A stretch of 48,917 nucleotides of DNA from Macrostomum lignano (Eukaryota): NCBI GenBank assembly GCA_002269645.1, contig NIVC01001140.1:1-48917 (forward strand). The letters run 5' to 3'. Below, one piece after another: positions 1 through 32,779 of this stretch (positions within the stretch are counted from its first letter, which is position 1; every line of letters begins with the position of its first letter). The notes beneath the pieces are model-generated. The model was not told the DNA's origin and searched no databases. It was given only the letters and a program-made list of their open reading frames with translations. Position numbers and translations under genes: made by a program.

Positions 1-420
1 GATCTGCCTTGTGCAGTGGGTCTTAGACTGCCTTCGCGTGCTTGGGGGTATTAGTCCTGCCTTGTGCTCTGGGGTATTAGATCTGCCTTGTGCTGGGGGT
101 ATTAGACCTGCCTTGTGCTTGGGGTATTAGACCTGCCTTGTGCTCTGGGGGTATTAGACCTGCCTTGTGCTCTGGGGGTATTAGACCTGCCTTGTGCTTG
201 GGGTATTAGACCTGCCTTGTGCTCTGGGGGTATTAGACCTGCCTTGTGCTCTGGGGTATTAGACCTGCCTTTGTCTGGGGGTATTAGACCTGCCTTGTGC
301 TCTGGGGGTATTAGATCTGCCTTGTGCTTTGGGGGTATTAGACCTGCCTTGTGCTCTGGGGGTATTAGACCTGCCCTGTGCTCTGGGGTATTAGACCTGC
401 CCTGTGCTCTGGGGTCATAG
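1..420. repeat. Intronic minisatellite, 24-27 bp unit (acctgccttgtgctctgggggtattag)
   Basis: Direct inspection; runs up to the DGAT1 acceptor. Confidence 0.95.
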
Positions 421-3164: not shown

Positions 3165-3982
3165 ACCCATAGTGGGATCAGCACCTCATAGTGGGATCAG
3201 CACCTCATAGTTGGGATCAGCACCTCATAGTGGGATCAGCATCCATAGTGGGATCAGCACCCCATAGTGGATCAGCATCCCATAGTGGGATCAGCCCCCA
3301 TAGTGGGATCAGCACCCCATAGTGGGATCAGCACCCCATAGTGGGATCAGCACCTCATAGTGGGATCAGCATCCCATAGTGGGATCAGCACCACATAGTG
3401 GGATCAGCACCCCATAGTGGGATCAGCATCCCATAGTGGGATCAGCACCCATAGTGGGATCAGCATCCCATAGTGGGATCAGCACCCCATAGTGGGATCA
3501 GCACCCCATAGTGGGATCAGCATCCCATAGTGGGATCAGCACCTCATAGTTGGGATCAGCACCTCATAGTGGGATCAGCACCCCATAGTGGGATCAGCAC
3601 CCATAGTGGGATCAGCATCCCATAGTGGGATCAGCACCCCATAGTGGGATCAGCACCCCATAGTGGGATCAGCACCCCATAGTGGGATCAGCATCCCATA
3701 GTGGGATCAGCATCCCATAGTGGGATCAGCACCCCATAGTGGGATCAGCACCCCATAGTGGGATCAGCATCCCATAGTGGGATCAGCACCCCATAGTGGG
3801 ATCAGCATCCCATAGTGGGATCAGCACCTCATAGTGGGATCAGCATCCCATAGTGGGATCAGCATCCCATAGTGGGATCAGCACCCCATAGTGGGATCAG
3901 CATCCCATAGTGGGATCAGCACCTCATAGTGGGATCAGCATCCCATAGTGGGATCAGCACCCCATAGTGGGATCAGCACCCA
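3165..3982. repeat. Minisatellite, 20 bp unit (ccatagtgggatcagcaccc), upstream of the MRPL46 acceptor
   Basis: About 40 copies by inspection. Confidence 0.95.
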
Positions 3983-4014
3983 GGATCTGCATCCCAGTCC
4001 CCCGCCATCCGCAG

Positions 4015-5290
4015 GCTACATCAGCCGCTGTGGCTGCCCTGTGGCGATCGGGCTCAGCCGCCACTCCGGGCCTCACCCGGTCTGGCCGGCTGCTCAGCGT
4101 TGGCCTGCTCATCCAGCGCAAAGCTGTGCTCACGCCTGACCTCACTGAACTGGAGACTCGAGCCTCGGACCTCTTCACCCGGCTGGACTTTGAGCGCAGC
4201 CGCCTGTCCGACTTTGAGCTGCGCGACCGCGCCGAGTCGGAGGCAGCCAAGCGGAGCCTCAGCGCAGCCGCGGAGGGCAAAGTCCAGGTGGCCAGGGACG
4301 GCGCCGTAATTACCGCCAAGGACCTGATGCAGCGGTGGGCTGCTGAGCAACAGGCAGTCACTCTGGCCTCCAGGTGTGCTGTCGGTTTCACTTAATGCTT
4401 TAATTGTATTGCATAGCCACTCTCGCTACTCACAGTAGCTGTTTGCACAGCTAGGTCAGCTGCAGTCCGTCCTCACTACTCACAGTATCAAATAGCTGTT
4501 TGCACAGCTAGGTCAGCTGCAGTCCGCTCTCACTACTCACAGTAGCTGTTTGCACAGCTAGGTCAGCTGCAGTCCGCTCTCACTACTCACAGTAGCTGTT
4601 TGCTCAGCTAGGTCAGCTGCAGTCCGCTCTCACTACTCACAGTAGCTGTTTGCACAGCTAGGTCAGTTGCAGTCCGCTCTCACTACTCACAGTAGCTGTT
4701 TGCACAGCTAGGTCAGCTGCAGTCCGCTCTCACTACTCACAGTAGCTGTTTGCACAGCTAGGTCAGCTGCAGTCCGCTCTCACTACTCACAGTAGCTGTT
4801 TGCACAGCTAGGTCAGTTGCAGTCCGCTCTCACTACTCACAGTAGCTGTTTGCACAGCTAGGTCAGCTGCAGTCCGCTCTCACTACTCACAGTAGCTACT
4901 CCGCATTCTCTCCACCACAGGGAGGCCGCCGACCCCAGCCTGAAGCGGCCAGCCGTGCTGCTCAGCACGGATGCTGACCTCTGCCTCCCCTGCTGCCCAG
5001 TTGTTGACGGCGACGCCAGCCTTCGAGCCGCCTGCGACCGCCTACTGGAGCTGATGGGGCTGACCGCCAGCTGCCGGTTGCTAGGCAACGCGCCAGTCGG
5101 CCTGCACACGTACAAGTACAAGAAATCCCCAGTTTCCCTGTTCCTGCACCGGGCCATCTTCACCGGTGCCGACTGGCGCAGCGCGGAGGCCTCGGGCAGC
5201 TGGAAGTGGGTGGACGCGGACTCGCTGCCCGGCCGCGTCCCGGACAGGCGGCTGCTGAAGAAGCTGCGGCTGCTGGCTGCCGAGTTTTGA
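4015..5290 (+). CDS. MRPL46: Mitochondrial ribosomal protein mL46 (MRPL46), two exons; no genomic ATG found
   Basis: Exons 4015-4373 and 4921-5290 join in phase 2 (729 nt, open to the stop). LLIQRKAVLTPDLTELE..LDFERSRLSDFELR, AKDLMQRW and LLGNAPVGLHTYKY match the mL46 pattern as recalled. The N-terminus ATSAAVAALWRSGS looks like a mitochondrial presequence. Confidence 0.85.
4425..4897. repeat. Intronic minisatellite, 50 bp unit
   Basis: cactactcacagtagctgtttgcacagctaggtcagctgcagtccgctct, about 9 copies. Confidence 0.95.
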
Positions 5291-5556
5291 CTTTTAATTT
5301 GTAGCTTCACTGGCAGCAGCCCAGTTACTTTGTAGCCTAATGTGTTATCATTGATTGCTAGCTTTTTCTACCCATAAAATGCACCCTACACTGCATTTTC
5401 TGCGTGCAGACCTTTGCTGCTAGAACAATTTTCTGTTGTTTCGCTTTTTATTTTTTGTTCTTGTTAATTTTCTGCTTTTTGTTCTTAGAATTTAACTTCA
5501 ATAACTTTTACTCCCTACTAGCAGTAGTCTGTTCGATCGCTCCGCAGCCTCTTCCT

Positions 5557-7146
5557 ATGCCGCTGCTGCCGCTGCTGTCCTCTGGGCGGCTGGCCCGTCT
5601 GACCGCCTCTGGCCGCCGTCTTCTCAGCTCCACCAGCGGCGGCGCGCAGCCTCCCAAGACCGGCATCCTCATGCTGAACATGGGCGGGCCGGAGACACTG
5701 GACGATGTTGGCGACTTTCTGCACCGCCTGTTCAGTGACGGGGACTTGATCCCGTTGCCCGCACAGTCTCGGCTGTCTAAGTACATCGCCAGGAGGCGCA
5801 CCCCGGCCATCAGGGAGCAGTACTACCGCATTGGCGGCGGCAGCCCAATCCTCAAGTGGACTGAGGCTCAGGTGAGTCCCCGCTCAGGGGACAGTTTTAG
5901 CTTTTGTTTAGCTTCAATCTTAGTATTCGGTGAGTGGATGCAAATTTTCTAGCGATACTGGCTTGGCATTTCACATATGAGCTTCTGCATGTGTCCAAGT
6001 GCGAGACTCGGACTCACGATTGGCCAGGACCAGTGTCTGAGTTCTCTTTGCCAGCTCAAAGACACACGCGTCAAATTTCTGTTTATCCATCAGTGCGCAA
6101 CCTTTTGCACACCCTATAAGAGATTCGCTTCAAATTGTTTCCTTGCTTCTCTTCAGTAGGCGATCTCTCTTATATATCACTGTTCGGGTGCCGATATGTA
6201 TCGTAAATAACTTTCCAGCATGTCAGACTTCGTAGGAGCTGACCAGCCATGAAAGCTGACCATGGGAGAATTATCCCCAAACCCGCAGGGCCGCGCCATG
6301 ACGGCTCAGCTGGACCGGCTGAGCCCGGGATCGGCGCCGCATCGCCACTACGTTGGCTTCCGCTACGCCCGGCCGCTGCTGGAGGACGCCGTGGAGGCGA
6401 TGGAGCGGGACGGCGTGCAGCACGCGATCGCCTTCTCACAGTACCCGCAGTACTCCTGCAGCACCAGCGGCAGCTCCTTCAACGCGCTGGCCGCGTACTA
6501 CCGCAAGCGCAGCGGGGCCAGCAGCATTCAGCGCTGGTCGCTCATCGACCGCTGGCCGGCGCACGCTGGCTTCGTGGCCGCCGTGGCCGAGCGGGTTCGG
6601 CCAGAGCTGGATAGGCTGGGGCCGGAGGAACGGGCCCGCTGCGCGCTGCTGTTCTCCGCCCACTCGCTGCCCATGTCGGTGGTGAACCGGGGCGACCCGT
6701 ACCCGGCTGAGGTGGCCGTCACCGCCCATATGGTGGCGCAGGCGCTGGGCCCCGGCAGCGTGCCGTACCGGCTGGTCTGGCAGTCCAAGGTGGGTCCGCT
6801 GCCCTGGCTGGGCCCCAGCACGGAGGAGGCCATCCGCGGCCTGGTGAAGCGCGGCCGCGACCAGCTGGTTCTGGTGCCCATCGCCTTCACCAGCGACCAC
6901 ATCGAGACGCTGTACGAGCTGGACGTCGAATACGCAGGCAAACTGGCCGGCGACCTCGGCGCCCGCGTCCTCCGCTCCGAGGCTCTCAACGACAGTCCGA
7001 CCTTCGTGTCTGCGCTGGCCGACCTGGTGCTGCAGCACCTGGCCGAGGGCTGCACCGTCAGCTCGCAGTTCCAGCTGCGCTGCCCGCTGTGCACAAATCC
7101 CAGGTGCGCCGCGGCCAGGGAGTTCTTCGCCCAGCATGGCAACTGA
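5557..7146 (+). CDS. FECH: Ferrochelatase, mitochondrial, animal [2Fe-2S] type, two exons, ~390 aa
   Basis: Exons 5557-5871 and 6289-7146 join in phase 0. Motifs [64 protein letters not shown] and C-terminal CPLCTNPRC cluster ligands are present, with an Arg/Ser-rich presequence. Confidence 0.97.
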
Positions 7147-7982
7147 CTGGCTGCTGTCTTACCGGTGCTGATCCTCCTTTATTGCGTCTGTTCAGCAATT
7201 GTATGTTTTTGTCTTACCGGCTGCATTCGGTTGACGATTTTGGTTTACCTGCGACGGCCCACAATGTATAACTGGGGCTGATATTTGCACCGCTTGTTCT
7301 TATAGTTAGTTATAGGCAGGTGCATGCCTTTGGCGCTGACCTGCTTCTCCCAGATTCCTTCGCTTTGTTCTGCTTTATTCGGCATTTTCAGCTAGTAAAA
7401 ATGAATTGTATGGCTGTAACTGTGCATTAATTATTAATCATATCGAAATAAACTCGGAGTTGCTGGCGCCTCTGTGAGAGCTCTGCAACTGATCAGCTTT
7501 ACTACTTGACAGAATATCTAGTGTGGCTTCCTGGACAATCGTACCTGAGCCAATAATTAATGGAATGCGTTCTCGTTGCTGGGTTAATGTGATTTTTGCT
7601 GCGCTATTTGGCAGGTACTTTGTGAACTTATTAGAACCCAACAGGCAGACATTATGGCTTATGCGGTCACATGATGCAATTACAGCTACGAATATGCACA
7701 TGGAAGAGTCAAATGTAGCACCTCTAGCGAGCGGCGACTTCTCTTAACTCATTCACTCTACACTCGGAGGGGTCTACTATAAAGCTGTCGTAGCGTAAGT
7801 TCGATCGTACGTCGGAACTTTTACACTGCGGAAATAAGAACAATCTTATGTTACGATGGCTTTGTAGAACTGGCCCGGATATTTTAACATGGCACTGAGA
7901 GGACTCTTAAACTCCAGATAGTTATCATTGCTTCACAATGGACTTCGGTGGGCTGGATTCCGGGACTTCAGAGGGGCCGTCT

Positions 7983-8372
7983 CCCCAGTGCTTCAGTGGA
8001 CTGGCTCCCCAGTGCTTCAGTGGACTGGCTCCCCAGTGCTTCAGTGGACTGGCTCCCCAGTGCTTCAGTGGACTGGCTCCCCAGTGCTTCAGTGGACTGG
8101 CTCCCCAGTGCTTCAGTGGACTGGCTCCCCAGTGCTTCAGTGGACTGGCTCCCCAGTGCTTCAGTGGACTGGCTCCCCAGTGCTTCAGTGGACTGGCTCC
8201 CCAGTGCTTCAGTGGACTGGCTCCCCAGTGCTTCAGTGGACTGGCTCCCCAGTGCTTCAGTGGACTGGCTCCCCAGTGCTTCAGTGGACTGGCTCCCCAG
8301 TGCTTCAGTGGACTGGCTCCCCAGTGCTTCAGTGGACTGGCTCCCCAGTGCTTCAGTGGACTGGCTCCCAAG
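7983..8372. repeat. Intergenic minisatellite, 24 bp unit (ccccagtgcttcagtggactggct)
   Basis: About 16 near-perfect copies. Confidence 0.97.
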
Positions 8373-8496
8373 TGCATGTACTAAACTTATTTTTTAAAAG
8401 GCTCAAAAGATTTTCATGAAACTTGCACCGTTCGATCATAAAGGCACTAGAATGTTTCGCAAACAAACTCATTTATTAAATCTGAAGTACTTTTGG

Positions 8497-9170: not shown

Positions 9171-10099
9171 ATGGCCACCGATCTCAGAGACAAACTCAAA
9201 AGAAGGCATTCCCCACTGCTCGATGAGTCCGAGCCCAGCGTCAAGTCAGCCGAGCCCACAGAGAAGCACCTGACGGAGCTGCGGCAGTGGCGCTTCGCCC
9301 GCTCCTTGGTGGACGTCTTCCTGAAGGGAGACGGCAGGATGTACCACACAGCGGATAAGAACCTTTCGGAGGCGCAGAACATGCTGGACCGCTGGCTGCT
9401 GTCCTTCCAGCTGGACTACGCTGGCAGCATGGACTCGCGCTACCCGCTGTTTCCGCAAAGCCTGAGAGAGGAGGACTCGGTGAACCAGAAGCTGATCGAC
9501 GAGTGCGTGGAGAAGAAGTTCAGCTCGGACAGGGAGAACGCCAGGACCATCTTTGGTCAGTTGGAGCAGCGACTGCGCAAGTTCCTGAAGGACGATGGCA
9601 GGGACGAAGACACGAGCGACCTCCGCATAGAGCTGATTGAGGACAGCGAAGATGCAGCTCACGTGACACTGGGCGACTTCAAGTCCAAGCACTGCTGGCG
9701 GGTGAAGTTCCTGGTGCGCAACTTCGGACTGCTGCCAGCCACCAGGATGCTGATCAGGTACGAGGCGCTGGGCACCGGCAGTCTGCAGTGGGGCGACCCC
9801 ATCACAGTGCACAATGCACTGCATGACCTCATGGGAGTTCGGTACGAGGGCTTCGCGTCTCCTCTGAACTCCAAGATGATCGACAAGGCGGACTCTCGCT
9901 TCTGCAGCCTCTTCATCGACACTGACGAGGAGTTCGGCAGCATGGGCAGCTTCTTCAAGGTGGACTTCTCCAAGTGCCACGGCGGATGGACGGTCAACCC
10001 GCCATTCATCGAGGAGCTCATGGACCGGGTGGCCACCAAGGTGCTGAACTACCTGGACACTGGCGATGAGAACTGCTGGTTCTTCGTCACCTTCCCCAG
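9171..10099 (+). CDS. PCIF1-like exon 1: N-terminal part and catalytic core of module 1
   Basis: ORF 9171..10112, containing FASPLN and NPPF motifs; donor GT at 10100. Confidence 0.85.
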
Positions 10100-13000
10100 G
10101 TTCGACTGTTGAGAGCGCTCAGCTTTTTGTTCCACCAGCAACCTTTTTAATCATACTTAGCAGTCCCGGATCAACTCAGGATTGTCATCAGCCACCGATC
10201 CCGGTATTTGAGCCTATTTGGGATCCGCACCAGCCACTGATCCCGGTATTTGAGCACTCTATTTGGGATCCTCTCCCAGCCACTGATCCCGGTATTTGAG
10301 CACTCTATTTGGGATCCTCTCCCAGCCACAGATCCCGGTATTTGAGCACTCTATTTGGGATCCGCACCAGCCACTGATCCCGGTATTTAAGCCTATTTGG
10401 GATCCTCTCCCAGCCACTGATCCCGGTATTTGAGCACTCTATTTGGGATCCTCTCCCAGCCACAGATCCCGGTATTTGAGCACTCTATTTGGGATCCTCT
10501 CCCAGCCACTGATCCCGGTATTTGAGCACTCTATTTGGGATCCTCTCCCAGCCACTGATCCCGGTATTTGAGCCTATTTGGGATCCTCACCCAGCCACTG
10601 ATCCCGGTATATGAGCACTCTATTTGGGATTCTGTACAAGCTATGGATCCAGAGATACGGGATTTGAGCATTCAAGTCGCGATCTTCTCCCAGCTATTGA
10701 TCCCGGGATCTGAGCACTTTTTGGGACCATCTGCCGCTCAATACTCCCAGGATTTGAGAGCCACAATTTTACTGGGATGTCTCTTGGCCTGAAAGGAGCT
10801 CTCCCACAACATTAAGCGCAAATTCTGAGGGTATTTACGAGCTAAAAGTGGAGTGACTCTGTGAAACTGATGCAGTTAAATTACCAGTGTATCTCAGATA
10901 CTTGATTAAAAATTGCTGTCTGCATTGCACTAGGAATTACCAATTTACTCGTATTTACACCTGTACTCGTAGTTTGAGCGACCTGTCTACACAGTACAGC
11001 TAAGCAAGTGCGCTTCTAGCTCAGAAATCTCTGAGGTGGCGACCTTTGCTTAGTTAACATTCATGGCAGATTTCAAAGCATGCCAAAATTCTGTCTATAC
11101 CCGATCCTCGCTACTCTTAGTAGAGGAATGTGCTGGTCTGCTTCAGTTTTTCTCCAAGTCGAAGCCTTCTTGCGGCCGAATGAATTTTATTTAGATAGGA
11201 ATTCGATGATCAAATCGGATTTGATTGCTTCCAACCCACTAAGGGGATTTCTTATCTACGTCAGAAACTTTTTTATTTTTCTTACACCTCTAAATTGTAT
11301 TTTTTCCATCGCCTAAACATCCGCCAGGTGGGATGACACCCCCGGCTGGGTGCGTCTCAGTGATTCCAAGCGCCGCATCGACCAGATCGAGCTGGACGAC
11401 GGCGGCTTCACGGTGCAGGACTGCTACGGCCGCATCTTCGTGCCCCGCAACAACCTCACCATCTTCGTGATGGGGAACCGCCTGCCCGATGATGCCAACC
11501 TAAAGGAGATTCGCAAGATGTTCCGCAACCTCAACCGGCACATGGTGGAGGAGGAGTGGCGGATGACCTGCAGCAAGCAGCTCCGTGTAATCCTCAAGCC
11601 CAGCCGGCACAGAGCTGCCAAGACCGACGGCCATGAGACGGGCAACACCGCGGATCTCCGGAACAGACTCAAAAGAAGGCATTCCCCACTGCTTGATGAG
11701 TCCGAGCCCAGCGTCAAGTCAGCCGAGCCCACAGAGAAGCACCTGACGGAGCTGCGGCAGTGGCGCTTCGCCCGCTCCTTGGTGGACGTCTTCCTGAAGG
11801 GAGACGGCAGGATGTACCACACAGCGGATAAGAACCTTTCGGAGGCGCAGAACATGCTGGACCGCTGGCTGCTGTCCTTCCAGCTGGACTACGCTGGCAG
11901 CATGGACTCGCGCTACCCGCTGTTTCCGCAAAGCCTGAGCGAGGAGGACTCGGTGAACCAGAAGCTGATCGACGAGTGCGTGGAGAAGAAGTTCAGCTCG
12001 GACAGGGAGAACGCCAGGACCATCTTTGGTCAGTTGGAGCAGCGACTGCGCAAGTTCCTGAAGGACGATGGCAGGGACGAAGACACGAGCGACCTCCGCA
12101 TAGAGCTGATTGAGGACAGCAAAGATGCAGCTCACGTGACACTGGGCGACTTCAAGTCCAAGCACTGCTGGCGCGTGAAGTTCCTGGTGCGCAACTTCGG
12201 ACTGCTGCCAGCCACCAGGATGCTGATCAGGTACGAGGCGCTGGGCACCGGCAGTCTGCAGTGGGGCGACCCCATCACAGTGCACAATGCACTGCATGAC
12301 CTCATGGGAGTTCGGTACGAGGGCTTCGCGTCTCCTCTGAACTCCAAGATGATCGACAAGGCGGACTCTCGCTTCTGCAGCCTCTTCATCGACACTGACG
12401 AGGAGTTCGGCAGCATGGGCAGCTTCTTCAAGGTGGACTTCTCCAAGTGCCACGGTGGATGGACGGTCAACCCGCCCTTCATCGAGGAGCTCATGGACCG
12501 GGTGGCCACCAAGGTGCTGAACTACCTGGACACTGGCGATGAGAACTGCTGGTTCTTCGTCACCTTCCCCAGGTTCGACTGTTGAGAGCGCTCAGCGTTT
12601 TGTTCCACCAGCAACCTTTTTAATCTACTTAGTAGTCCTGGATCAACTCAGAATCCTCATCAGCCACCGATCCCGGTATTTGAGCCTATTTGGGATCCGC
12701 ACCAGCCACTGATCCCGGTATTTGAGCACTCTATTTGGGATCCTCTCCCAGCCACTGATCCCGGTATTTGAGCCTATTTGGGATCCTCTCCCAGCCACTG
12801 ATCCCGGTATTTGAGCCTATTTGGGATCCTTACCAGCCACTGATCCCGGTATTTAAGCCTATTTGGGATCCGCACCAGCCACTGATCCCGGTATTTGAGC
12901 ACTCTATTTGGGATCCTCTCCCAGCCACTGATCCCGGTATTTGAGCACTCTATTTGGGATCCTCTCCCAGCCACTGATCCCGGTATTTGAGCCTATTAGG

Positions 13001-15923
13001 GATCCTCACCCAGCCACTGATCCCGGTATTTGAGCCCATTTGGGATCCTCTCCCAGCCACTGATCCCGGTATTTGAGCCTATTAGGGATCCTCACCCAGC
13101 CACTGATCCCGGTATTTGAGCCCATTTGGGATCCTTACCAGCCACTGATCCCGGTATTTGAGCCTATTTGGGATCCTTACCAGCCACTGATCCCGGTATT
13201 TGAGCCTATTTGGGATCCTCTCCCAGCCACTGATCCCGGGATTCAAGCACTATTAGGGATCCTCACCCAGCCACTGATCCCGGTATTTGAGCACTCTATT
13301 TGGGATCCTCTCCCAGCCACTGATCCCGGTATTTAAGCCCATTTGGGATCCTTACCAGCCACTGATCCCGGTATTTGAGCCTATTTGGGATCCTCTCCCA
13401 GCCACTGATCCCGGTATTTGAGCACTCTATTTGGGATCCTCACCCAGCCACTGATCCCGGTATTTGAGCCTATTTGGGATCCTTACCAGCCACTGATCCC
13501 GGTATTTGAGCCTATTTGGGATCCTCTCCCAGCCACTGATCCCGGTATTTGAGCACTCTATTTGGGATTCTCTCCAAGCTATGGATCCAGAGATACGGGA
13601 TTTGAGCATTCAAGTCGCGATCCTCTCCCAGCTATTGATCCCGGGATCTGAGCACTTTTTGGGACCATCTGCCGCTCAATACTCCCAGGATTTGAGAGCC
13701 ACAATTTTACTGGGATGTCTCTTGGCCTGAAAGGAGCTCTCCTTCTACAACATTAAGCGCAAATTCTGAGGGTATCTACTAGCCATAAGTGGAGTGACTC
13801 TGTGAAACTGATGCAGTTAAATTACCAGTGTATCTCAGATACTTGATTAAAAATTGCTGTCTGCATTGTGCTACAAATTATCAATTTATATACGATCGTA
13901 GTTTAAGCGATCTGTCCACACAGTAGCAAAGCAGTGCGCTCATTCATGGCAGATTTCAAAGCATGCCAAAATTCCGTCTATATCCGATCCTAGCTACTCT
14001 TAGTGGAGGAATGTGCTGGTCTGCTTCAGTTTTCTCCAAATCGAAAGGGACAACCGCTACCAATTAAATTTTATTGGGATTCGGTGATCAAAACAGTGTT
14101 GATTGCTTCGAACTCACCGAGGTGATTTCTCCGCTTAGCCAGATACTTCCACTGTTTGAGTACTTTTGTTTTTTATTTCGTACTTTTAGTTCTCCTTAGT
14201 TACATCTCTAATTTGTATTATTTTCCGTTGCCGAAAATCCGCCAGGTGGGATGACACCCCCGGCTGGGTGCGTCTCAGTGATTCCAAGCGCCGCATCGAC
14301 CAGATCGAGCTGGACGACGGCGGCTTCACGGTGCAGGACTGCTACGGCCGCATCTTCGTGCCCCGCAACAACCTCACCATCTTCGTGATGGGGAACCGCC
14401 TGCCCGATGATGCCAACCTAAAGGAGATTCGCAAGATGTTCCGCAACCTCAACCGGCACATGGTGGAGGAGGAGTGGCGGATGACCTGCAGCAAGCAGCT
14501 CCGTGTAATCCTCAAGCCCAGCCGGCACAGAGCTGCCAAGACCGACGGCCATGAGACGGGCAACACCGCGGATCTCCGGAACAGACTCAAAAGAAGGCAT
14601 TCCCCACTGCTTGATGAGTCCGAGCCCAGCGTCAAGTCAGCCGAGCCCACAGAGAAGCACCTGACGGAGCTGCGGCAGTGGCGCTTCGCCCGCTCCTTGG
14701 TGGACGTCTTCCTGAAGGGAGACGGCAGGATGTACCACACAGCGGATAAGAACCTTTCGGAGGCGCAGAACATGCTGGACCGCTGGCTGCTGTCCTTCCA
14801 GCTGGACTACGCTGGCAGCATGGACTCGCGCTACCCGCTGTTTCCGCAAAGCCTGAGCGAGGAGGACTCGGTGAACCAGAAGCTGATCGACGAGTGCGTG
14901 GAGAAGAAGTTCAGCTCGGACAGGGAGAACGCCAGGACCATCTTTGGTCAGTTGGAGCAGCGACTGCGCAAGTTCCTGAAGGACGATGGCAGGGACGAAG
15001 ACACGAGCGACCTCCGCATAGAGCTGATTGAGGACAGCGAAGATGCAGCTCACGTGACACTGGGCGACTTCAAGTCCAAGCACTGCTGGCGCGTGAAGTT
15101 CCTGGTGCGCAACTTCGGACTGCTGCCAGCCACCAGGATGCTGATCAGGTACGAGGCGCTGGGCACCGGCAGTCTGCAGTGGGGCGACCCCATCACAGTG
15201 CACAATGCACTGCATGACCTCATGGGAGTTCGGTACGAGGGCTTCGCGTCTCCTCTGAACTCCAAGATGATCGACAAGGCGGACTCTCGCTTCTGCAGCC
15301 TCTTCATCGACACTGACGAGGAGTTCGGCAGCATGGGCAGCTTCTTCAAGGTGGACTTCTCCAAGTGCCACGGTGGCTGGCATGTGAACCCACCCTTCAT
15401 CGAGGCCATGATGGACCGGGTGGCCTCAAGGATTTTGGACTATCTGGACACTGGCGATGAGAACTGCTGGTTCTTCGTCACCTTCCCCAGGTGGGACGAT
15501 GCCCCCAGCTGGGAGCGCCTCAGCCTCTCTAAGCACCTCATTGACAAGTTTGCGCTTGACAATGGCGGCTTCACGGTGCAGGACGGCTACGGCCGCGTCT
15601 TCGAGCCGCGCAACAACCTCACCATCTTCGTGCTGGGCCACCGCCTTCCCGAGGGCGCCAACCTGCAGGAGATTCGCAAGATGTTCCGCAACCTGGACAA
15701 GAGCAGGGTGGAGCAGGAGTGGCAGATGACCTGCGGCAAGCAGCTCCGCCGAATGCTCACGGCCACCCGGCGCAGTGCAGTCAGGGTTTCTGGGGACTCC
15801 CCAGCTCGCTGCCTCCCAGACGATGACGTGCCGTCCGCCGCCCCGGCAGTGCTGCCCGCCAAGCCCGTCATCGACCCGCAGCTGAAGCCGAATCGCCAGT
15901 TGAAGCGGTTCAAGAAGTCCTAG
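9171..15923 (+). CDS. Triple-domain PCIF1/CAPAM-like N6-adenine methyltransferase without a WW domain; three exons, ~1283 aa
   Basis: Exons 9171-10099, 11328-12572, 14246-15923. Both introns are phase 2 (CCC AG|GTTCGA ... CCGCCAG|G TGG) and restore FPR-WDD, which is contiguous in the third module. The total is 3852 nt, a multiple of 3. Each module has RYEALG..LQW, EGFASPLN, RFCSLF.DTD..FGS.GSFF and VNPPF, the PCIF1-family pattern. Confidence 0.82.
10188..10630. repeat. Minisatellite, 42-46 bp unit, in PCIF1-like intron 1
   Basis: ccggtatttgagc(act)ctatttgggatcctctcccagccactgatc. Confidence 0.95.
11328..12572 (+). CDS. PCIF1-like exon 2: C-terminal part of module 1, linker, and core of module 2
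   Basis: Acceptor ccgccag ends at 11327. The exon is 1245 nt (415 codons, one repeat unit) and lies within ORF 11350..12585. Confidence 0.85.
12660..13570. repeat. Same 42-46 bp minisatellite, expanded, in PCIF1-like intron 2
   Basis: About twice the length of the intron-1 array; accounts for most of the 445-bp intron length difference. Confidence 0.95.
14246..15923 (+). CDS. PCIF1-like exon 3: C-terminal part of module 2, complete module 3, and basic tail
   Basis: Acceptor at 14245; ORF 14268..15923 ends in KPNRQLKRFKKS*. Confidence 0.88.
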
Positions 15924-18149: not shown

Positions 18150-19312
18150 GCCTTACATGTACTAACTGCCTTACTAACTGTCTTACTAACTGTCTTACTA
18201 ACTGTCTTACTAACTGTCTTACTAACTGTCTTACTAACTGCCTTACTGTCTTACTTACTGCCTTACTAACTGTCTTCCTAACTGTCTTACTAACTGTCTT
18301 ACTAACTGCCTTACTAACTCCCTTACCAACTGCCTTACTAACTGTCTTCCTAACTGCCTTACTGTCTTACTTACTGCCTTACTAACTGTCTTCCTAACTG
18401 CCTTACTAACTGTCTTACTTACTGCCTTACTAACTGTCTTACTTACTGCCTTACTAACTGCCTTACTAACTGTCTTACTAACTGCCTTACTAACTGCCTT
18501 ACCAACTGCCTTACTAACTGTCTTCCTAACTGCCTTACTGTCTTACTTACTGCCTTACTAACTGTCTTCCTAACTGCCTTACTGACTGTCTTACTTACTG
18601 CCTTACTAACTGTCTTACTTACTGCCTTACTAAATGTCTTACTTACTGCCTTACTAACTGTCTTACTTACTGCCTTACTAACTGTCTTACTTACTGCCTT
18701 ACTAACTGTCTTACTTACTGCCTTACTAACTGTCTTACTTACTGCCTTACTAACTGCCTTACTAACTGTCTTACTAACTGCCTTACTAACTGCCTTACCA
18801 ACTGCCTTACTAACTGTCTTCCTAACTGCCTTACTGTCTTACTTACTGCCTTACTAACTGTCTTCCTAACTGCCTTACTAACTGTCTTACTTACTGCCTT
18901 ACTAACTGTCTTACTTACTGCCTTACTAAATGTCTTACTTACTGCCTTACTAACTGTCTTACTTACTGCCTTACTAACTGTCTTACTTACTGTCTTACTA
19001 ACTGTCTTACTTACTGTCTTACTAACTGTCGTACTTACTGCCTTGCTAACTGTCTTACTTACTGCCTTACTAACTGTCTTACTTACTGCCTTACTAACTG
19101 TCTTACTTACTGTCTTACTAACTGCCTTACTAACTGTCTTACTAACTGTCTTACTTACTGCCTTACTAACTGTCTTACTTACTGCCTTACTAACTGTCTT
19201 ACTTACTGTCTTACTAACTGTCTTACTTACTGCCTTACTAACTGTCTTACTTACTGCCTTACTAACTGTCGTACTTACTGCCTTGCTAACTGTCTTACTT
19301 ACTGCCTTACTA
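18150..19312. repeat. 12 bp-unit tandem repeat (cttactaactgt / cttactaactgc)
   Basis: Direct inspection. Confidence 0.95.
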
Positions 19313-19669: not shown

Positions 19670-21500
19670 ATCCTTCTCTCTCTCTCTCTCTCTCTCTCTC
19701 CATCTCCATCTCTCATTATATCTCTCCATCTCCATCTCTCATTGTATCTCTCGATCTCCATCTCTCATTATATCTCTCCACCTCCATCTCTCATTGTATC
19801 TCTCGATCTCCATCTCTCATTATATCTCTCCATCTCTATCTCTCATTGTATCTCTCGATCTCCATCTCTCATTGTATCTCTCGATCTCCATCTCTCATTG
19901 TATCTCTCGATCTCCATCACTCATTGTATCTCTCGATCTCCATCTCTCATTGTATCTCTCGATCTCCATCTCTCATTGTATCTCTCGATCTCCATCTCTC
20001 ATTATATCTCTCTATCTCTATCTCTCATTATATCTCTTCATCTCCATCTCTCATTATATCTCTCCACCTCCATCTCTCATTATATCTCTTCATCTCCATC
20101 TCTCATTATATCTCTCCATCTCCATCTCTCATTATATCTCTCCATCTCTATCTCTAGTTGTATCTCTCGATCTCCATCTCTCATTATATCTCTCCATTTC
20201 TATCTCTCATTGTATCTATCAATCTCCATCTCTCATTGTATCTCTCGATCTCCATCTCTCATTATATCTCTCGATCTCCATCCCTTGTTGTATCTCTCCA
20301 TCTCCATCTCTCATTATATCTCTCTATCTCTATCTCTCATTATATCTCTCGATCTCCATCTCTCATTATATCTCTCCATCTCCATCTCACATTATATCTT
20401 TCGATCTCCATCTCTCATTATATCTCTCCATCTCCATCTCACATTATATCTCTCGATCTCCATCTCTCATTATATCTCTCCATCTCCATCTCTCATTATA
20501 TCTCTCCTTCTCCATCTCTCATTGTATCTCTCGATCTCCATCTCTCATTATATCTCTCCACCTCCATCTCTCATTGTATCTCTCGATCTCCATCTCTCAT
20601 TATATCTCTCCATCTCTATCTCTCATTGTATCTCTCGATCTCCATCTCTCATTGTATCTCTCGATCTCCATCTCTAGTTGTATCTCTCGATCTCCATCTC
20701 TCATTGTATCTCTCGATCTCCATCTCTCATTGTATCTCTCGATCTCCATCTCTCATTGTATCTCTCGATCTCCATCTCTCATTATATCTCTCTATCTCTA
20801 TCTCTCATTATATCTCTTCATCTCCATCTCTCATTATATCTCTCCACCTCCATCTCTCATTATATCTCTTCATCTCCATCTCTCATTATATCTCTCCATC
20901 TCCATCTCTCATTATATCTCTCCATCTCTATCTCTAGTTGTATCTCTCGATCTCCATCTCTCATTATATCTCTCCATTTCTATCTCTCATTGTATCTATC
21001 AATCTCCATCTCTCATTGTATCTCTCGATCTCCATCTCTCATTATATCTCTCGATCTCCATCCCTTGTTGTATCTCTCCATCTCCATCTCTCATTATATC
21101 TCTCTATCTCTATCTCTCATTATATCTCTCGATCTCCATCTCTCATTATATCTCTCCATCTCCATCTCACATTATATCTTTCGATCTCCATCTCTCATTA
21201 TATCTCTCCATCTCCATCTCACATTATATCTCTCGATCTCCATCTCTCATTATATCTCTCCATCTCCATCTCTCATTATATCTCTCCATCTCCATCTCTC
21301 ATTATATCTCTTCATCTCCATCTCACATTATATCTCTCCATCTCCATCCCTCATTATATCTCTCCATCTCCATCTTTCATTATATCTCTCCATCTCCATC
21401 TCTAATTATATCTCTCGATCTCCATCTCTCATTATATCTCTCTATCTCTATCTCTCATTATATCTCTCGATCTCCATCTCTCATCATATCTCTCTCCATC
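19670..21500. repeat. CT-rich 26 bp-unit repeat with a 780-bp higher-order duplication
   Basis: Unit tctccatctccatctctcattatatc. Lines 20161 and 20941, and lines 19741 and 20521, are identical. Confidence 0.95.
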
Positions 21501-22707: not shown

Positions 22708-25700
22708 ATGGACAAGAAGGAGTACTGCAAGGTCACCGTGCACTGGGAGAACAAGTCTACTGGGAAAATGGACACCAGGATCCTGGTAATTAGTCCGCGA
22801 CAGTCTGAAATAAACTGCCACTGCGCGCAGACTCTTGCGCCAATCAAGCAAAGCTGCACAAAATGTCTTGTTAGCTCTGTAGCTCTAGTGGTGAAGGTGA
22901 ATGGGGCCGATTTGTGGGGTTCGTGCGCTCTTTTACACCGCCATCCAAACTGACCACTGACTCAACCGACTGATGTACGGATAAGTGTGGGGGAGTGACC
23001 AGGGCACGCATAAGTGTGCGGGAGTGACCAGGGCACGCATATAAGTGTGCGGGAGTGACCAGGGCACGCATAAGTGTGCGGGAGTGACCAGGGCACGCAT
23101 ATAAGTGTGCGGGAGTGACCAGGGCACGCATATAAGTGTGGGGGAGTGACCAGGGCACGCATATAAGTGTGCGGGAGTGACCAGGGCACGCATAAGTGTG
23201 CGGGAGTGACCAGGGCACGCATAAGTGTGCGGGAGTGACCAGGGCACGCATAAGTGTGGGGGAGTGACCAGGGCACGCATAAGTGTGCGGGAGTGACCAG
23301 GGCACGCATAAGTGTGCGGGAGTGACCAGGGCACGCATATAAGTGTGCGGGAGTGACCAGGGCACGCATAAGTGTGGGGGAGTGACCAGGGCACGCATAA
23401 GTGTGCGGGAGTGACCAGGGCACGCATATAAGTGTGCGGGAGTGACCAGGGCACGCATATAAGTGTGCGGGAGTGACCAGGGCACGCATATAAGTGTGCG
23501 GGAGTGACCAGGGCACGCATATAAGTGTGGGGGAGTGACCAGGGCACGCATATAAGTGTGCGGGAGTGACCAGGGCACGCATAAGTGTGCGGGAGTGACC
23601 AGGGCACGCATAAGTGTGGGGGAGTGACCAGGGCACGCATAAGTGTGCGGGAGTGACCAGGGCACGCATAAGTGTGCGGGAGTGACCAGGGCACGCATAA
23701 GTGTGGGGGAGTGACCAGGGCACGCATAAGTGTGGGGGAGTGACCAGGGCACGCATAAGTGTGCGGGAGTGACCAGGGCACGCATATAAGTGTGCGGGAG
23801 TGACCAGGGCACGCATATAAGTGTGGGGGAGTGACCAGGGCACGCATATAAGTGTGCGGGAGTGACCAGGGCACGCATAAGTGTGCGGGAGTGACCAGGG
23901 CACGCATAAGTGTGCGGGAGTGACCAGGGCACGCATATAAGTGTGGGGGAGTGACCAGGGCGCGCATATTAGTGTGGGGGAGTGACCAGGGCACGCATAA
24001 GTGTGCGGGAGTGACCAGGGCACGCATAAGTGTGCGGGAGTGACCAGGGCACGCATAAGTGTGAGGGAGTGACCAGGGCACGCATAAGTGTGGGGGAGTG
24101 ACCAGGGCACGCATAAGTGTGCGGGAGTGACCAGGGCACGCATATAAGTGTGGGGGAGTGACCAGGGCACGCATAAGTGTGGGGGAGTGACCAGGGCACG
24201 CATAAGTGTGCGGGAGTGACCAGGGCACGCATATAAGTGTGCGGGAGTGACCAGGGCACGCATAAGTGTGCGGGAGTGACCAGGGCACGCATAAGTGTGC
24301 GGGAGTGACCAGGGCACGCATAAGTGTGCGGGAGTGACCAGGGCACGCATATAAGTGTGGGGGAGTGACCAGGGCGCGCAAATAAGTGTGCGGGAGTGAC
24401 CAGGGCACGCATATAAGTGTGGGGGAGTGACCAGGGCGCGCATAAGAGACGGCCTATTGGAGTCAGTAGGCTCACAATCCGACACTGAAGCCAAGCATCA
24501 CGGATGCACCTCTGTGACGAAGAAATCGAAACTGCCTCTTATCCCCAGATCATGCGGTCCGATCGCATGGAGGTGGCGGTGCTGAAAGGCCAGATCCGCA
24601 CCGAGCGCTCTGTGCACTTCCTGGACATCCGCCGACTGGAAGCGGGCGGGGAGAACCGCGCCAGTCTGCAGATAAGCACCGGCGAGGTCCTGCAGTTCAT
24701 CTGCACTCTCGAGGCCGACCTCATCAAGCTGGTTTCGCATCTGGTGGCCAGCCTGCAGTTTCACCTGCCGCAGCTGCGCACCACACAGCAGCAGCTCTTG
24801 GATCTGCGGCTGCCAAAGTCGTGGGACCTGGAGTCCTTGGTAGAGGCCCACAAGGCGGAGCTGGGCCGGCCGGGCTCGGACAAGTGCGGCCACTTCGGCA
24901 GCGCCTACGAGTTCTTCTGTCGCTACACGGGCGCCGAGGTTCGCGAAGAGATCCGCTGGGACGTGGAGACCATCTACTTCTCGCAGGGCTCGCGCACCTT
25001 CAACATGACTGACTTTAGCCACTTCGGCCCGGCGGACTTCGCCATCATCCTGGCCTCCCTCAGCTTCAATGACTACTTCACTGCGCTCCATGTCGAGGGC
25101 ATCAAGTTTGTGAGCTCCTGGCTGTGCACAAGATCCGCATTTGTGACTCTGGGTTGCCTGGCCCTTGGATCTCCGAACCAATCAGATGTCCTTGGGCTCA
25201 CTGGGTCAGCGTGGTCCTTGGTTAGGCTTCCGAACCAATCAGATGTCCTTGGGCTCGCTGGGTCAGCGTGGGCCTTGGTTAGGCTTCCGAACCAATCAGA
25301 TGTCCTTGGGCTCGCTGGGTCAGCGTGGGCCTTGGTTAGGCTTCCGAACCAATCAGATGTCCTTGGGCTCGCTGAGTCAGACTTGTGGTTTGCTGCAGAC
25401 GTACTAAAAGTAGTATTGATATACTTCAAATAGAAAACACTACGAGTCTCGTATCCGTACAAGTTAATTCGGGAGCTTTAAGCTTCAGGTGGCTTCAGAG
25501 TTTAGGTGGGGGCTAAATTTCATCCATCGGTACATCGAACTCAAAACTTCTCACGAATCATTTGTCCCTTCCAGACAGCTCAGATGAGCAAGTTCCTGGA
25601 GATGATGCTGACTTACAACACAACGCTGCTGGAATTGCACCTGCCCAACTGCGGCCTAAAAATGTGAGTAGCTATCACTGCTTCTCACCCTGCTCTCTGC

Positions 25701-31700: not shown

Positions 31701-32452
31701 AGCAGCTGGTACCAATCAATCAGTCACACTGACCAAGCAGCTGGTACCAATCATCAACAAGTCACATGACCAAGCAGCTGGTACCAATCATCAACAAGTC
31801 ACATGACCAAGCAGCTGGTACCAATCATCAACAAGTCACACTGACCAAGCAGCTGGTACCAATCATCAACAAGTCACATGACCAAGCAGCTGGTACCAAT
31901 CATCAACAAGTCACACTGACCAAGCAGCAGGCACCAATCATCAACAAGTCACACTGACCAAGCAGCAGGCACCAATCATCAACAAGTCACATGACCAAGC
32001 AGCAGGCACCAATCATCAACAAGTCACACTGACCAAGCAGCTGGTACCAATCAATCAGTCACACTGATCAAGCAGCTGGTACCAATCATCAACAAGTCAC
32101 ACTGACCAAGCAGCAGGCACCAATCATCAACAAGTCACACTGACCAAGCAGCAGGCACCAATCATCAACAAGTCACATGACCAAGCAGCAGGCACCAATC
32201 ATCAACAAGTCACACTGACCAAGCAGCTGGTACCAATCAATCAGTCACACTGACCAAGCAGCTGGTACCAATTAACCAGTCACATCAAAAGACAAACAAT
32301 GAAACCGGTACCTTACCGCAGACTCGGGCACCGCGGCACCAGCAGCGCGGACCTCGGTGATCATTGATGGCAAGTCATCGCCGCGATTGGAGGAGCATGA
32401 TGACCGGAAGCTGAAGTCTCTGCCCACCGAAAAATCTAAATCCAAGCCATGA
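22708..32452 (+). CDS. CARMIL: CARMIL / LRRC16 (PH-like domain, LRRs, helical dimerisation region, proline-rich tail); 13 exons, ~1171 aa
   Basis: Exons 22708-22785, 24549-25109, 25575-25663, 25740-25837, 26458-26657, 27538-27615, 27708-28068, 28268-28358, 28445-28493, 28904-29766, 30420-30507, 30558-31386, 32322-32452. All phases are compatible (3516 nt). EEIRWDVETIYFSQGSRTFNMTDFSH and LSKLDISGNWMQDLGAKFLAKSL match CARMIL as recalled. The first exon and the 30558 acceptor are less certain. Confidence 0.88.
22978..24445. repeat. CARMIL intron 1 minisatellite, 29/31 bp unit (ataagtgtgcgggagtgaccagggcacgc[at])
   Basis: About 48 copies by inspection. Confidence 0.97.
25165..25380. repeat. Intronic 57 bp tandem repeat
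   Basis: Three to four copies; visible as a 19-aa repeat in the ORF track. Confidence 0.9.
25985..26385. repeat. Intronic 20 bp tandem repeat (tctgggcgtcactcactcac)
   Basis: Direct inspection. Confidence 0.92.
26822..27175. repeat. Intronic 39 bp tandem repeat
   Basis: Period 39, about 9 copies. Confidence 0.93.
28509..28886. repeat. (AGTC)n microsatellite
   Basis: Perfect tetranucleotide run of about 94 units inside a CARMIL intron. Confidence 0.99.
31436..32283. repeat. Intronic ~35-39 bp tandem repeat (actgaccaagcagctggtaccaatcatcaacaagtcac)
   Basis: Direct inspection; last CARMIL intron. Confidence 0.93.
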
Positions 32453-32779
32453 GAGCCTGTGTACCGCTAAGAAGTACTTTTTATCTATTTAATCAGCATA
32501 TTCAGAGTCCTGACTCAATCACCAATCTTTTATCAGAGTGAAAAAAACTTCACTTTTCAGGCTTTTTGACAAATTTCGCCAAATTTCTGCACATTTATCC
32601 TCTTTTTCTGCTCCCCCCCCGAATGCACGCTGAGACGACTTTGAGTCGCTCCTCACTGGTTCTGACTTTCTGCGCTGCCTCCCCTCAGTGCCGCACCCCA
32701 TTATATTAAGTATTTTCTGTGATTAGTTCGTGATTATTCTAGACTTTTAGCTCAGCACAGAAGCATGCGACAGCTGAAC

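What the first reader, a model, noticed from the sequence alone, without database searches (positions are those of the whole stretch)
9171..15923. One protein with three tandem PCIF1/CAPAM-type adenine methyltransferase domains and no WW domain
Seen: three ORFs that look like separate gene copies can be spliced into one frame (9171-10099 + 11328-12572 + 14246-15923, 3852 nt, ~1283 aa). The two phase-2 introns split each module at FPR^WDD, a junction that is contiguous in module 3. Every module keeps FASPLN and the catalytic NPPF motif. Established: canonical animal PCIF1 is a single cap-specific m6Am methyltransferase recruited to the Pol II CTD by an N-terminal WW domain; WW-less PCIF1-like domains are known from large DNA viruses and some protists. 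Inference: a WW-less, concatenated three-active-site enzyme is an architecture I do not recognise. It could be a lineage-specific RNA-cap (for example spliced-leader or snRNA cap) or DNA adenine methyltransferase, possibly of viral or horizontal origin.
Basis: partly seen in the sequence, partly recalled or inferred. Interest (0 to 1): 0.9.

Follow-up and report, generated by a model that had tools for sequence, protein, structure and literature searches.

The report
Flatworm gene with three PCIF1-like modules
A gene of the flatworm Macrostomum lignano, already in GenBank but never studied, really does join three near-identical copies of a WW-less PCIF1-type RNA adenine methyltransferase into one 1283-residue protein; this is a young internal duplication in a known enzyme family, an unusual architecture rather than a new kind of system.

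Summary
9171-10099 + 11328-12572 + 14246-15923 splice into one 3852-nt frame through two GT..AG phase-2 introns. The product has three complete modules, each with FASPLN and NPPF, and no WW domain.

The window is the start of M. lignano contig NIVC01001140.1. The exact 1283-aa model is public (PAA71771.1, BOX15_Mlig000263g2) and comes from an RNA-seq-based annotation. Two other contigs carry the same three-module gene in the same synteny, so it is not an assembly artefact.

Each module folds like human and zebrafish PCIF1/CAPAM (Foldseek E 2e-15). The intron sits at the end of strand β5, so the next exon supplies a helix and strands β6-β7 of the preceding methyltransferase domain. A read-through product ending FPRFDC* would be an incomplete fold.

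Divergence patterns point to an older two-module gene (dS about 0.4) extended recently by unequal crossing-over.

The closest relatives are single-module, WW-less M. lignano paralogs. Beyond them lies a large family, sampled members of which sit on giant-virus-like contigs, often fused to cap or transcription enzymes. Two-module relatives exist there, but their first catalytic motif is degenerate.

Function is inferred: a Pol II CTD-independent N6-adenine RNA methyltransferase, probably acting next to the cap. The number of modules in the mature mRNA is unverified.

The parts
9171..10099 (+). Exon 1 (CDS from the ATG): helical domain plus methyltransferase core of module 1, up to strand β5 (..FFVTFPR)
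   Evidence: identical to the GenBank model PAA71771.1
10100..11327 (+). Intron 1 (GT..AG, phase 2). Read-through would give FPRFDC* after 4 codons
   Evidence: the same splice contexts occur in all six introns of the three loci
10189..10630 (.). 46-nt minisatellite (about 9.8 copies) inside intron 1
11328..11643 (+). Start of exon 2: tail' (helix, β6, β7 and C-terminal helices that complete module 1) plus a disordered basic linker
11644..12572 (+). Rest of exon 2: helical domain plus methyltransferase core of module 2. It has no ATG of its own (AAC ACC GCG where module 1 has ATG GCC ACC)
12573..14245 (+). Intron 2 (GT..AG, phase 2), paralogous to intron 1
12661..13579 (.). 43-nt minisatellite (about 21 copies) inside intron 2. 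Copy-number differences account for the different intron lengths
14246..14561 (+). Start of exon 3: second copy of tail' plus linker (first 300 nt compared, 100% identical to 11329-11628), completing module 2
14562..15923 (+). Module 3, uninterrupted: helical domain, methyltransferase core, older diverged tail'' and a disordered basic C-terminus, then the stop codon
9996..10007 (+). NPPF catalytic motif of module 1
12469..12480 (+). NPPF catalytic motif of module 2
15387..15398 (+). NPPF catalytic motif of module 3

Best explanation
This is one real three-exon gene of Macrostomum lignano (BOX15_Mlig000263g2). It encodes 1283 residues made of three complete WW-less PCIF1/CAPAM-like modules. Each module has an N-terminal helical domain and a Rossmann methyltransferase domain with intact SAM-binding and NPPF motifs. 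The modules are joined by disordered, basic linkers of about 45 residues, like beads on a string. Splicing is needed: each intron cuts the methyltransferase fold after strand β5, and the next exon supplies the helix and β6-β7 that finish that domain before running on into the next module. The gene arose by internal duplication. An older two-module gene (A-type module, intron, tail', then B-type module with tail''; dS about 0.4) gained a third module by recent unequal crossing-over inside the 5' 810 nt of the modules, and the copies are still being homogenised. Inferred mechanism: each module transfers a methyl group from SAM to N6 of adenine. By homology, and because relatives are fused to cap and transcription enzymes, the likeliest substrate is the cap-adjacent adenosine of capped RNA (m6Am-type). 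It would act without Pol II CTD tethering, since there is no WW domain. Shown here: sequence, architecture, fold, conservation and duplication history. Inferred: catalysis, substrate, and that all three modules are present in the mature protein.
For: Frame and splice sites. A public model identical to the window product comes from a StringTie/TACO/TransDecoder RNA-seq annotation that also cuts transcripts at detected SL and poly(A) sites. Three contigs carry three modules each, share synteny, have intron lengths of 1228-1941 nt and keep all six introns GT..AG. Modules 2 and 3 lack their own ATG, and the frame stays open through tail' and linker. For tail' versus tail'', dS is 0.40 and omega 0.38-0.5; pN<pS for the whole old segment has p=0.002. 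Against outgroups, tail' keeps the ancestral residue at least as often as tail''. The AF2 model of one module has pLDDT 86.7 and pTM 0.85. The intron falls at R310, at the end of β5 (302-309); helix 315-321 and strands 326-332 and 353-359 come from the next exon. In the two-module model, pLDDT is 85-90 across the splice junction, the linker 395-439 is below 50, and pTM is 0.49. Foldseek top hits are human and zebrafish CAPAM (E 2e-15 to 3e-13), and the next fold scores 3e-3. PDB sequence hits are 6IRV/6IRX at E 1e-17, or 1e-30 to 1e-31 with a family profile. Residues invariant in the family are all present. Relatives are fused to FtsJ (x6), mRNA G-N7 methyltransferase, viral poly(A) polymerase, RNA polymerase subunits, XRN and RNase III. 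The SL's terminal ATG joined at 11328 reads ATG GTG GGA TGA, so trans-splicing there would not give an in-frame start.
Against: I saw no read-level RNA evidence. The flanks of the two junctions are identical, and there are three near-identical loci, so short reads cannot count modules. Exon 2 is symmetric (1245 nt), and skipping it gives an in-frame 868-aa two-module product. The donor GTTCGA is weak, so intron retention (truncation at FPRFDC*) may be common. Omega of 0.4-0.5 is only moderate constraint. Modules 1 and 2 are nearly identical, so the third module may be a neutral, recent addition. Cap-binding residues could not be mapped. No enzymatic data exist for any WW-less PCIF1-like protein in the literature searched. 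One of the three loci (L002) has a 1-nt deletion that truncates module 3; this may be real decay or an assembly error.
Confidence: 0.68

Rival explanations
1. The mature mRNA usually carries fewer modules than the gene model. Either exon 2 is skipped, giving a two-module 868-aa protein, or the weak donors are often unused, giving truncated and probably NMD-targeted transcripts. The three-module protein would then be a minor isoform.
For: Exon 2 is 1245 nt and symmetric, and skipping it stays in frame. Donor and acceptor contexts are identical at both introns, so E1-E3 and E1-E2 junction reads look the same. The donor matches the consensus only at GT and +5.
Against: The RNA-seq-based annotation reports the three-exon CDS at all three loci. 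Nothing in the sequence favours skipping.
Confidence: 0.15
2. The protein is as modelled, but it is not a cap-adjacent m6Am enzyme. It could methylate internal RNA adenines, snRNA or DNA (6mA), or act mainly as an RNA-binding scaffold.
For: There is no WW domain, so there is no co-transcriptional tethering. Cap-contacting residues could not be mapped. The published SL begins with C, so about 30% of mRNAs would lack a cap-adjacent A. The family belongs to the M.TaqI-like group of DNA and RNA N6-adenine methyltransferases.
Against: The whole module, helical domain included, matches CAPAM structures far better than any DNA methyltransferase. Relatives are fused to cap 2'-O- and N7-methyltransferases, poly(A) polymerase and RNA polymerase subunits rather than to chromatin or DNA modules. 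NPPF and the SAM motifs are intact.
Confidence: 0.2
3. These are three separate tandem gene copies, or one functional copy plus two truncated pseudogene-like copies. ORFs 1 and 2 would end at FPRFDC*, and ORF 3 would be translated from an internal Met.
For: Each read-through ORF has a stop 4 codons past the donor. M. lignano processes polycistronic precursors by SL trans-splicing. In-frame Met codons exist in exons 2 and 3, the first at codon 48.
Against: Modules 2 and 3 have no ATG at the module start, and the frame is open through 105 codons of tail' plus linker. tail' is under purifying selection and is no more derived than tail''. The truncated products lack a helix and β6-β7 of the fold. 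The SL ATG is out of frame at these acceptors. The annotation pipeline, which cuts at SL and poly(A) sites, kept one gene.
Confidence: 0.07
4. The triplication is an assembly artefact, produced by mis-joined haplotypes or expansion of a repeat.
For: Mlig_3_7 is highly redundant and repeat-rich. The modules are 97-100% identical.
Against: Three independently assembled contigs all show three modules, with different intron lengths and private substitutions. At least two modules are structurally required, because tail' and tail'' differ by 24% at the DNA level.
Confidence: 0.02

Closest known systems
Vertebrate PCIF1/CAPAM (human 6IRV/6IRW, zebrafish 6IRX-6IS0), the cap-specific m6Am methyltransferase
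   Same: Same Pfam family (PF12237). Same helical-plus-Rossmann fold (Foldseek E 2e-15). NPPF catalytic motif and the FASPLN / DTDxxFGS SAM-binding motifs are conserved.
   Different: No WW domain. The helical domain is much smaller (module about 400 aa against about 500 aa of crystallised core; TM 0.53). Only the methyltransferase core aligns significantly by sequence. There are three modules per polypeptide rather than one.
WW-less PCIF1-like proteins of Nucleocytoviricota (CroV, Tetraselmis virus 1, Hokovirus, pithovirus-like, Bodo saltans virus, salmon gill poxvirus) and many relatives on metagenomic contigs
   Same: Single helical-plus-methyltransferase module of about 310-450 aa with no WW domain. 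Shared N-terminal 'NIxERWL' helix motif and core motifs. These give the best full-length sequence matches outside Macrostomum.
   Different: The flatworm gene is a spliced host gene flanked by ordinary animal genes in conserved synteny. Its clade carries a distinctive 'F.VQD.YG' tail motif and separates from the virus-like sequences in an NJ tree. It has three modules.
Two-module PCIF1-like proteins (650-870 aa; e.g. P0002, P0003, P0006, P0030) on dense, intronless, giant-virus-like contigs. I found no literature describing them.
   Same: Tandem full PCIF1-like modules in one polypeptide, spaced about 350-370 aa apart.
   Different: Their first module keeps the SAM motifs but has a degenerate catalytic tetrad (VPPI, SPQL and similar); only the second has NPP[F/Y]. 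That makes a pseudo-enzyme/enzyme pair. The duplication is old and independent, whereas the flatworm has three intact, near-identical modules.
M. lignano single-module paralogs (Mlig021227 440 aa, Mlig015920 372 aa, Mlig030305 361 aa)
   Same: Same WW-less clade. Mlig021227 is the sister gene, at 46-51% identity over 90% of a module.
   Different: One module each. Mlig015920 is intronless. Mlig021227 has 4 introns, none at the FPx^W position.
PCIF1-derived methyltransferase domain of DIRS1-type retrotransposons (Iyer et al. 2016, PMC4738411)
   Same: PCIF1-clade methyltransferase domain without a WW domain.
   Different: The DIRS1 domains sit inside RT/RNase H/tyrosine-recombinase polyproteins and have lost catalytic residues. 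Here there are no such domains and NPPF is intact.

Membership tests
PCIF1/CAPAM family (Pfam PF12237) | Significant match to the family profile above the gathering score | tested here: met
   90-104 bits against a cut-off of 31.1 for each of the three ORFs
PCIF1/CAPAM family (Pfam PF12237) | Catalytic NPPF tetrad after strand β4 | tested here: met
   NPPF at aa 276, 691 and 1106, following strand 271-275 in the model
PCIF1/CAPAM family (Pfam PF12237) | SAM-binding motifs and family-invariant residues | tested here: met
   R196, Y197, E226, F228, S230, P231, N233, D252, G259, P277 and W311 are invariant in the family alignment and present in every module
PCIF1/CAPAM family (Pfam PF12237) | Helical domain plus Rossmann methyltransferase fold as in the crystal structures | tested here: met
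   AF2 pLDDT 86.7; Foldseek 6IRW/6IRV E 2e-15, prob 1.0, TMq 0.53; next fold E 3e-3
Canonical animal PCIF1 (Pol II-tethered m6Am writer) | N-terminal WW domain that binds Ser5-phosphorylated CTD | tested here: not met
   No WW model hit at E<=0.01 in any ORF. No coding ORF other than translated minisatellite upstream of the ATG
Canonical animal PCIF1 (Pol II-tethered m6Am writer) | m7G-cap-contacting residues (human R239, R269, E563 as listed in PMC11550742) | tested here: inconclusive
   Only a weak alignment of the 'RWLL' helix to zebrafish 'FNRWLLE' (2.4 bits). Residue numbering could not be reconciled with the chains shown
Canonical animal PCIF1 (Pol II-tethered m6Am writer) | Methylates m7GpppAm-RNA at N6 | not testable with these tools
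   Needs a biochemical assay
WW-less single-module PCIF1-like proteins (giant-virus type) | Full-length similarity over the helical and methyltransferase domains, module of about 310-450 aa, no WW | tested here: met
   Matches span query residues about 30-390 at E 1e-30 to 1e-64. P0088, P0018 and P0019 lie on virus-like contigs. BFVD hits E 1e-16 to 1e-9
WW-less single-module PCIF1-like proteins (giant-virus type) | One module per protein | tested here: not met
   Three modules. Among the best 150 representatives, only this protein's own cluster has three full matches
DIRS1 retrotransposon methyltransferase domain | Embedded in an RT/RNase H/YR polyprotein, with catalytic residues lost | tested here: not met
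   No such domains in the protein or in the longer relatives scanned; NPPF intact

The most novel reading that the evidence does not exclude
A free-living flatworm lineage holds an expanded clade of giant-virus-type, Pol II-independent PCIF1-like methyltransferases, at least four loci including one three-active-site enzyme. The tandem enzyme would work as a multivalent cap-adjacent or other RNA adenine methyltransferase on a class of RNAs that canonical PCIF1 does not serve. Candidates are non-trans-spliced mRNAs, snRNAs, or marking of self versus foreign RNA. The module number would be under selection rather than a neutral by-product of a repeat-prone genome.
Probability: 0.1. Interest if true: 0.6.

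Novelty: new variant of a known kind. Interest (0 to 1): 0.4.

Why it matters
PCIF1/CAPAM is studied almost only as a single-domain, Pol II-tethered vertebrate enzyme. This locus shows three things. First, a tractable animal model with established RNAi and transgenesis carries a separate WW-less PCIF1-like gene family. Second, the module can be concatenated with every active site intact. Third, tandem PCIF1 modules recur independently on giant-virus-like contigs as a pseudo-enzyme/enzyme pair. Together these give an entry point for asking what WW-less PCIF1-like enzymes methylate, which has not been tested for any member. The locus is also a clean example of domain gain by unequal crossing-over, with an intron carrying the fold across the repeat boundary. 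The architecture itself is young and may be nearly neutral, so its biological weight is uncertain.

Tried and rejected
- A homolog search with a family alignment as query timed out.
- I searched for a canonical WW-PCIF1 of M. lignano using the human methyltransferase core copied from the tool alignments. It returned only short fragments and no Macrostomum entry, so that question stays open.
- Expression data: no occurrence of Mlig000263 in the text library or in the held supplements of three M. lignano papers. No paper links PCIF1 with Macrostomum.
- Mapping the human cap-binding residues failed. P0002 turned out to be a two-module virus-like protein rather than a canonical PCIF1, and the numbering in the review did not fit the chains.
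- Transposon origin of the inter-module intron: there are no other copies in the window and no terminal inverted repeats. The intron position is not shared with paralogs. Its origin stays unexplained.
- Rfam found nothing in the window.
- The taxon of the nearest non-Macrostomum sequence (P0011, Logan SRR21676451) could not be determined.
- The NJ tree has no support values and its tips are mostly unlabelled, so I use it only for coarse grouping.
Full report
**1. Observation**

The three stretches 9171-10099, 11328-12572 and 14246-15923 join into 3852 nt with a single terminal stop, giving 1283 aa. Both introns read CAG|GTTCGA ... polypyrimidine-CCGCCAG|G. Both are phase 2 and interrupt FPR^WDD, which is contiguous in the third module. 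FASPLN and NPPF occur once per module. Each read-through ORF hits Pfam PF12237 at E 1e-25 to 1e-29, and nothing resembling a WW domain is detected. The repeat periods are 2473 and 2918 nt.

**2. What and where**

The spliced product matches a 1283-aa GenBank protein of the flatworm Macrostomum lignano. The window is the first 48.9 kb of contig NIVC01001140.1; locus L001 is identical to window positions 1-25923. Its product is PAA71771.1, BOX15_Mlig000263g2.

GenBank annotation of this assembly was not made ab initio. It comes from a genome-guided RNA-seq assembly (STAR, StringTie, TACO, a de novo transcriptome and TransDecoder). Its TBONE step cuts transcripts at experimentally detected spliced-leader and poly(A) sites (PMC5730564). 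So the two introns have transcript support and the unit was not cut into separate genes.

I did not see any reads myself. The flanks of the two junctions are identical and there are three near-identical loci, so short reads cannot count modules.

**3. Not an artefact**

Two further contigs, NIVC01001141.1 and NIVC01002568.1, carry the same three-module gene between the same neighbours: ferrochelatase upstream and a Carm_PH/LRR gene downstream. Exons are 96-99.8% identical. The six introns range from 1228 to 1941 nt because a 43-46-nt minisatellite varies in copy number, and all six keep the same GT..AG contexts. At least two modules are structurally required in any case, because the two kinds of C-terminal tail differ by 24% at the DNA level.

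**4. Why one protein rather than three genes**

- Modules 2 and 3 have no ATG at the module start (AAC ACC GCG where module 1 has ATG GCC ACC). The frame stays open through the 105 codons that precede them.
- That stretch (tail' plus linker) is under purifying selection relative to the uninterrupted tail'' of module 3: dS 0.40, omega 0.38-0.5. Combined with the equally old 3' part of the methyltransferase core, pN<pS has p=0.002.
- Polarised against seven outgroup paralogs, tail' keeps the outgroup residue at least as often as tail'', so it is not decaying.
- In a confident AF2 model of one module (pLDDT 86.7, pTM 0.85), the intron falls at R310, the end of strand β5. Helix 315-321 and strands 326-332 and 353-359 of the same Rossmann domain are encoded by the next exon. 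A product ending FPRFDC* would therefore be an incomplete fold.
- A two-module model keeps pLDDT 85-90 across the splice junction. It predicts a disordered linker (residues 395-439, pLDDT below 50) and no confident inter-module packing (pTM 0.49), which looks like beads on a string.
- The M. lignano spliced leader ends in ATG. Joined at 11328 it reads ATG GTG GGA TGA, so trans-splicing at these acceptors would not supply an in-frame start.

Caveats:
- The donor is weak.
- Exon 2 is a symmetric 1245-nt exon, and skipping it gives an in-frame 868-aa two-module protein.

**5. History**

Modules 2 and 3 differ at one of the first 810 nt. From just before NPPF to the end of the core they then diverge at dS about 0.39, the same age as tail' versus tail''. 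Modules 1 and 2 share the A-type 3' core, and their tails are identical.

The simplest reading is an older two-module gene (A-type core, intron, tail', then B-type core with tail''). It would have gained a middle module by unequal crossing-over within the homogenised 5' parts, before the three loci diverged.

Homogenisation continues. Locus L002 carries the same 21-nt in-frame deletion in modules 2 and 3 only. It also has a 1-nt deletion that truncates its product to 1204 aa, which may be real or an assembly error.

The origin of the inter-module intron is unexplained. It is not shared with paralogs: Mlig021227 has four introns at other positions and Mlig015920 is intronless. It has no terminal inverted repeats and no other copies in the window.

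**6. Family placement**

By sequence, a module hits only PCIF1 in the PDB: E 1e-17 for the single sequence and 1e-30 to 1e-31 with a family profile. By structure, human and zebrafish CAPAM are the top hits (E 2e-15 to 3e-13), with a gap of twelve orders of magnitude to the next fold.

An exhaustive HMMER scan of 1.84 billion representatives gives 2341 relatives. The closest are WW-less single-module M. lignano paralogs. Next come 310-450-aa WW-less proteins that match across the whole module and share an N-terminal NIxERWL motif. Those whose context I read lie on dense, intronless contigs:
- P0088 sits with an NCLDV capsid gene, RNA polymerase and topoisomerase II.
- P0018 sits with Rpb5, RNase III and Skp1.
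- P0019 is itself fused to FtsJ.

BFVD structure hits are the PCIF1-like proteins of CroV, Tetraselmis virus 1, Hokovirus, pithovirus-like viruses, Bodo saltans virus and salmon gill poxvirus.

Among 56 longer relatives, the fusion partners are FtsJ (x6), mRNA guanine-N7 methyltransferase, viral poly(A) polymerase, RNA polymerase subunits, XRN, RNase III and helicases. WW is not among the 25 partner families listed. This ties the WW-less family to mRNA 5'-end and transcription chemistry.

In an unsupported NJ tree, all M. lignano paralogs plus three sequences of unknown origin form one clade, marked by an F.VQD.YG tail motif and separate from the virus-like sequences. A direct viral origin is therefore possible but not shown.

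**7. Are tandem PCIF1 modules unprecedented?**

No. About 16 of the best 150 representatives (650-870 aa) contain two full modules. Their first module keeps the SAM-binding motifs but has a degenerate catalytic tetrad (VPPI, SPQL and similar), and their second has NPP[F/Y]. The two whose context I read lie on virus-like contigs, one of 362 kb. That is an old pseudo-enzyme/enzyme pair. It is independent of the flatworm gene, which is the only protein in the list with three full, intact modules.

**8. Mechanism (inferred)**

Each module is predicted to bind SAM and to methylate N6 of adenine through NPPF. The CAPAM-like helical-plus-methyltransferase fold and the fusion partners of relatives make the cap-adjacent adenosine of capped RNA the likeliest substrate. 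Lack of a WW domain implies action without Pol II CTD tethering, as presumably in the viral homologs.

The published SL begins with C, so trans-spliced mRNAs are unlikely substrates for cap-adjacent adenine methylation.

Whether three sites give any advantage (avidity, dosage) or are a neutral product of a repeat-prone neopolyploid genome cannot be decided from sequence.

**9. Verdict**

The finding is real, and the gene model is already public though uncharacterised. I found no literature on it. It is a new architectural variant of a known family, not a new kind of system, and interest is moderate. The decisive test is full-length cDNA together with biochemistry on single and mutated modules.

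Noticed in passing
L007 3328-5724; L008 10001-12175; proteins P0002, P0003, P0006, P0029, P0030, P0044, P0082, P0089, P0100, P0101 and others: A recurrent class of 650-870-aa proteins with two tandem PCIF1-like modules. Module 1 keeps the SAM-binding motifs but has a degenerate catalytic tetrad; module 2 has NPP[F/Y]. This looks like a pseudo-enzyme/enzyme pair. The two whose context I read sit on dense, intronless, giant-virus-like contigs. I found no description of them in the literature searched.
   Followed up: partly
L007 1067-2530 (-) next to 3328-5724 (+): The same virus-like contig carries a second, single-module PCIF1-like gene (487 aa) about 800 bp from the two-module gene.
   Followed up: no
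proteins P0019, P0017, P0005, P0007, P0111, P0168 and the census of alignment A5: WW-less PCIF1-like modules are fused to FtsJ (x6), mRNA guanine-N7 methyltransferase, viral poly(A) polymerase, Rpb1/Rpb2/RNA_pol_N, XRN, RNase III, DEAD/SNF2 helicases and glycosyltransferase family 8.
   Followed up: partly
L002 (NIVC01001141.1), modules 2 and 3 and exon 3: This locus has the identical 21-nt in-frame deletion (EPSVKSA) in modules 2 and 3 but not in module 1, which indicates ongoing gene conversion between modules. It also has a 1-nt deletion in a C-run that frameshifts the last tail (1204-aa model); this may be real decay or a long-read indel error.
   Followed up: partly
window 10189-10630 and 12661-13579: A 43-46-nt minisatellite (CAGCCACTGATCCCGGTATTTGAGC(ACTC)TATTTGGGATCCTCTCC) fills much of both introns. 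Copy number differs in all six introns of the three loci.
   Followed up: partly
window 4-414, 969-1266, 3166-3981, 4420-4897, 7981-8375, 18160-19312, 19695-21494, 22977-24446, 28509-28886, 31430-32272, 32776-34309, 35406-35995, 36434-36924, 46124-46666, 47344-48237: The window is packed with minisatellites of 19-59-nt units, plus (AGTC)n and an (AG)n tract of about 900 nt. These account for the extreme GC/AT-skew segments and for the long repeat-encoded 'ORFs' in all frames, such as GASPLKHW at 7925-8419.
   Followed up: no
L004 (Mlig021227, 4 introns) and L012 (Mlig015920, intronless): M. lignano has at least four WW-less PCIF1-like loci with very different intron content. None shares the FPR^WDD intron, which suggests an intron-poor ancestor with later, gene-specific intron gains.
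   Followed up: partly
protein P0157 (UniProt A0A1I8JIN4, older ML2 annotation): A 443-aa M. lignano model joins a Sleeping Beauty-type transposase HTH to a PCIF1-like module. It is probably a chimeric gene prediction next to a Tc1/mariner element.
   Followed up: no
window 5548-7146 (+), 22708 onward (+), 41722-43884 (-): The neighbours are ordinary animal genes: ferrochelatase, a Carm_PH/LRR (CARMIL-like) gene, and a RhoGEF-FYVE protein encoded in a single 720-aa ORF. The first two are syntenic in all three loci. The gene numbering (g2, g4, g6 for three loci) hints that each transcriptional unit holds a second gene, possibly an upstream partner.
   Followed up: no
window 9246-9980, 11719-12453, 14637-15383 (- strand): Each module carries 244-248-aa antisense ORFs. 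They have no start-codon conservation or homology evidence and are most simply a by-product of GC-rich codon usage on the sense strand.
   Followed up: no
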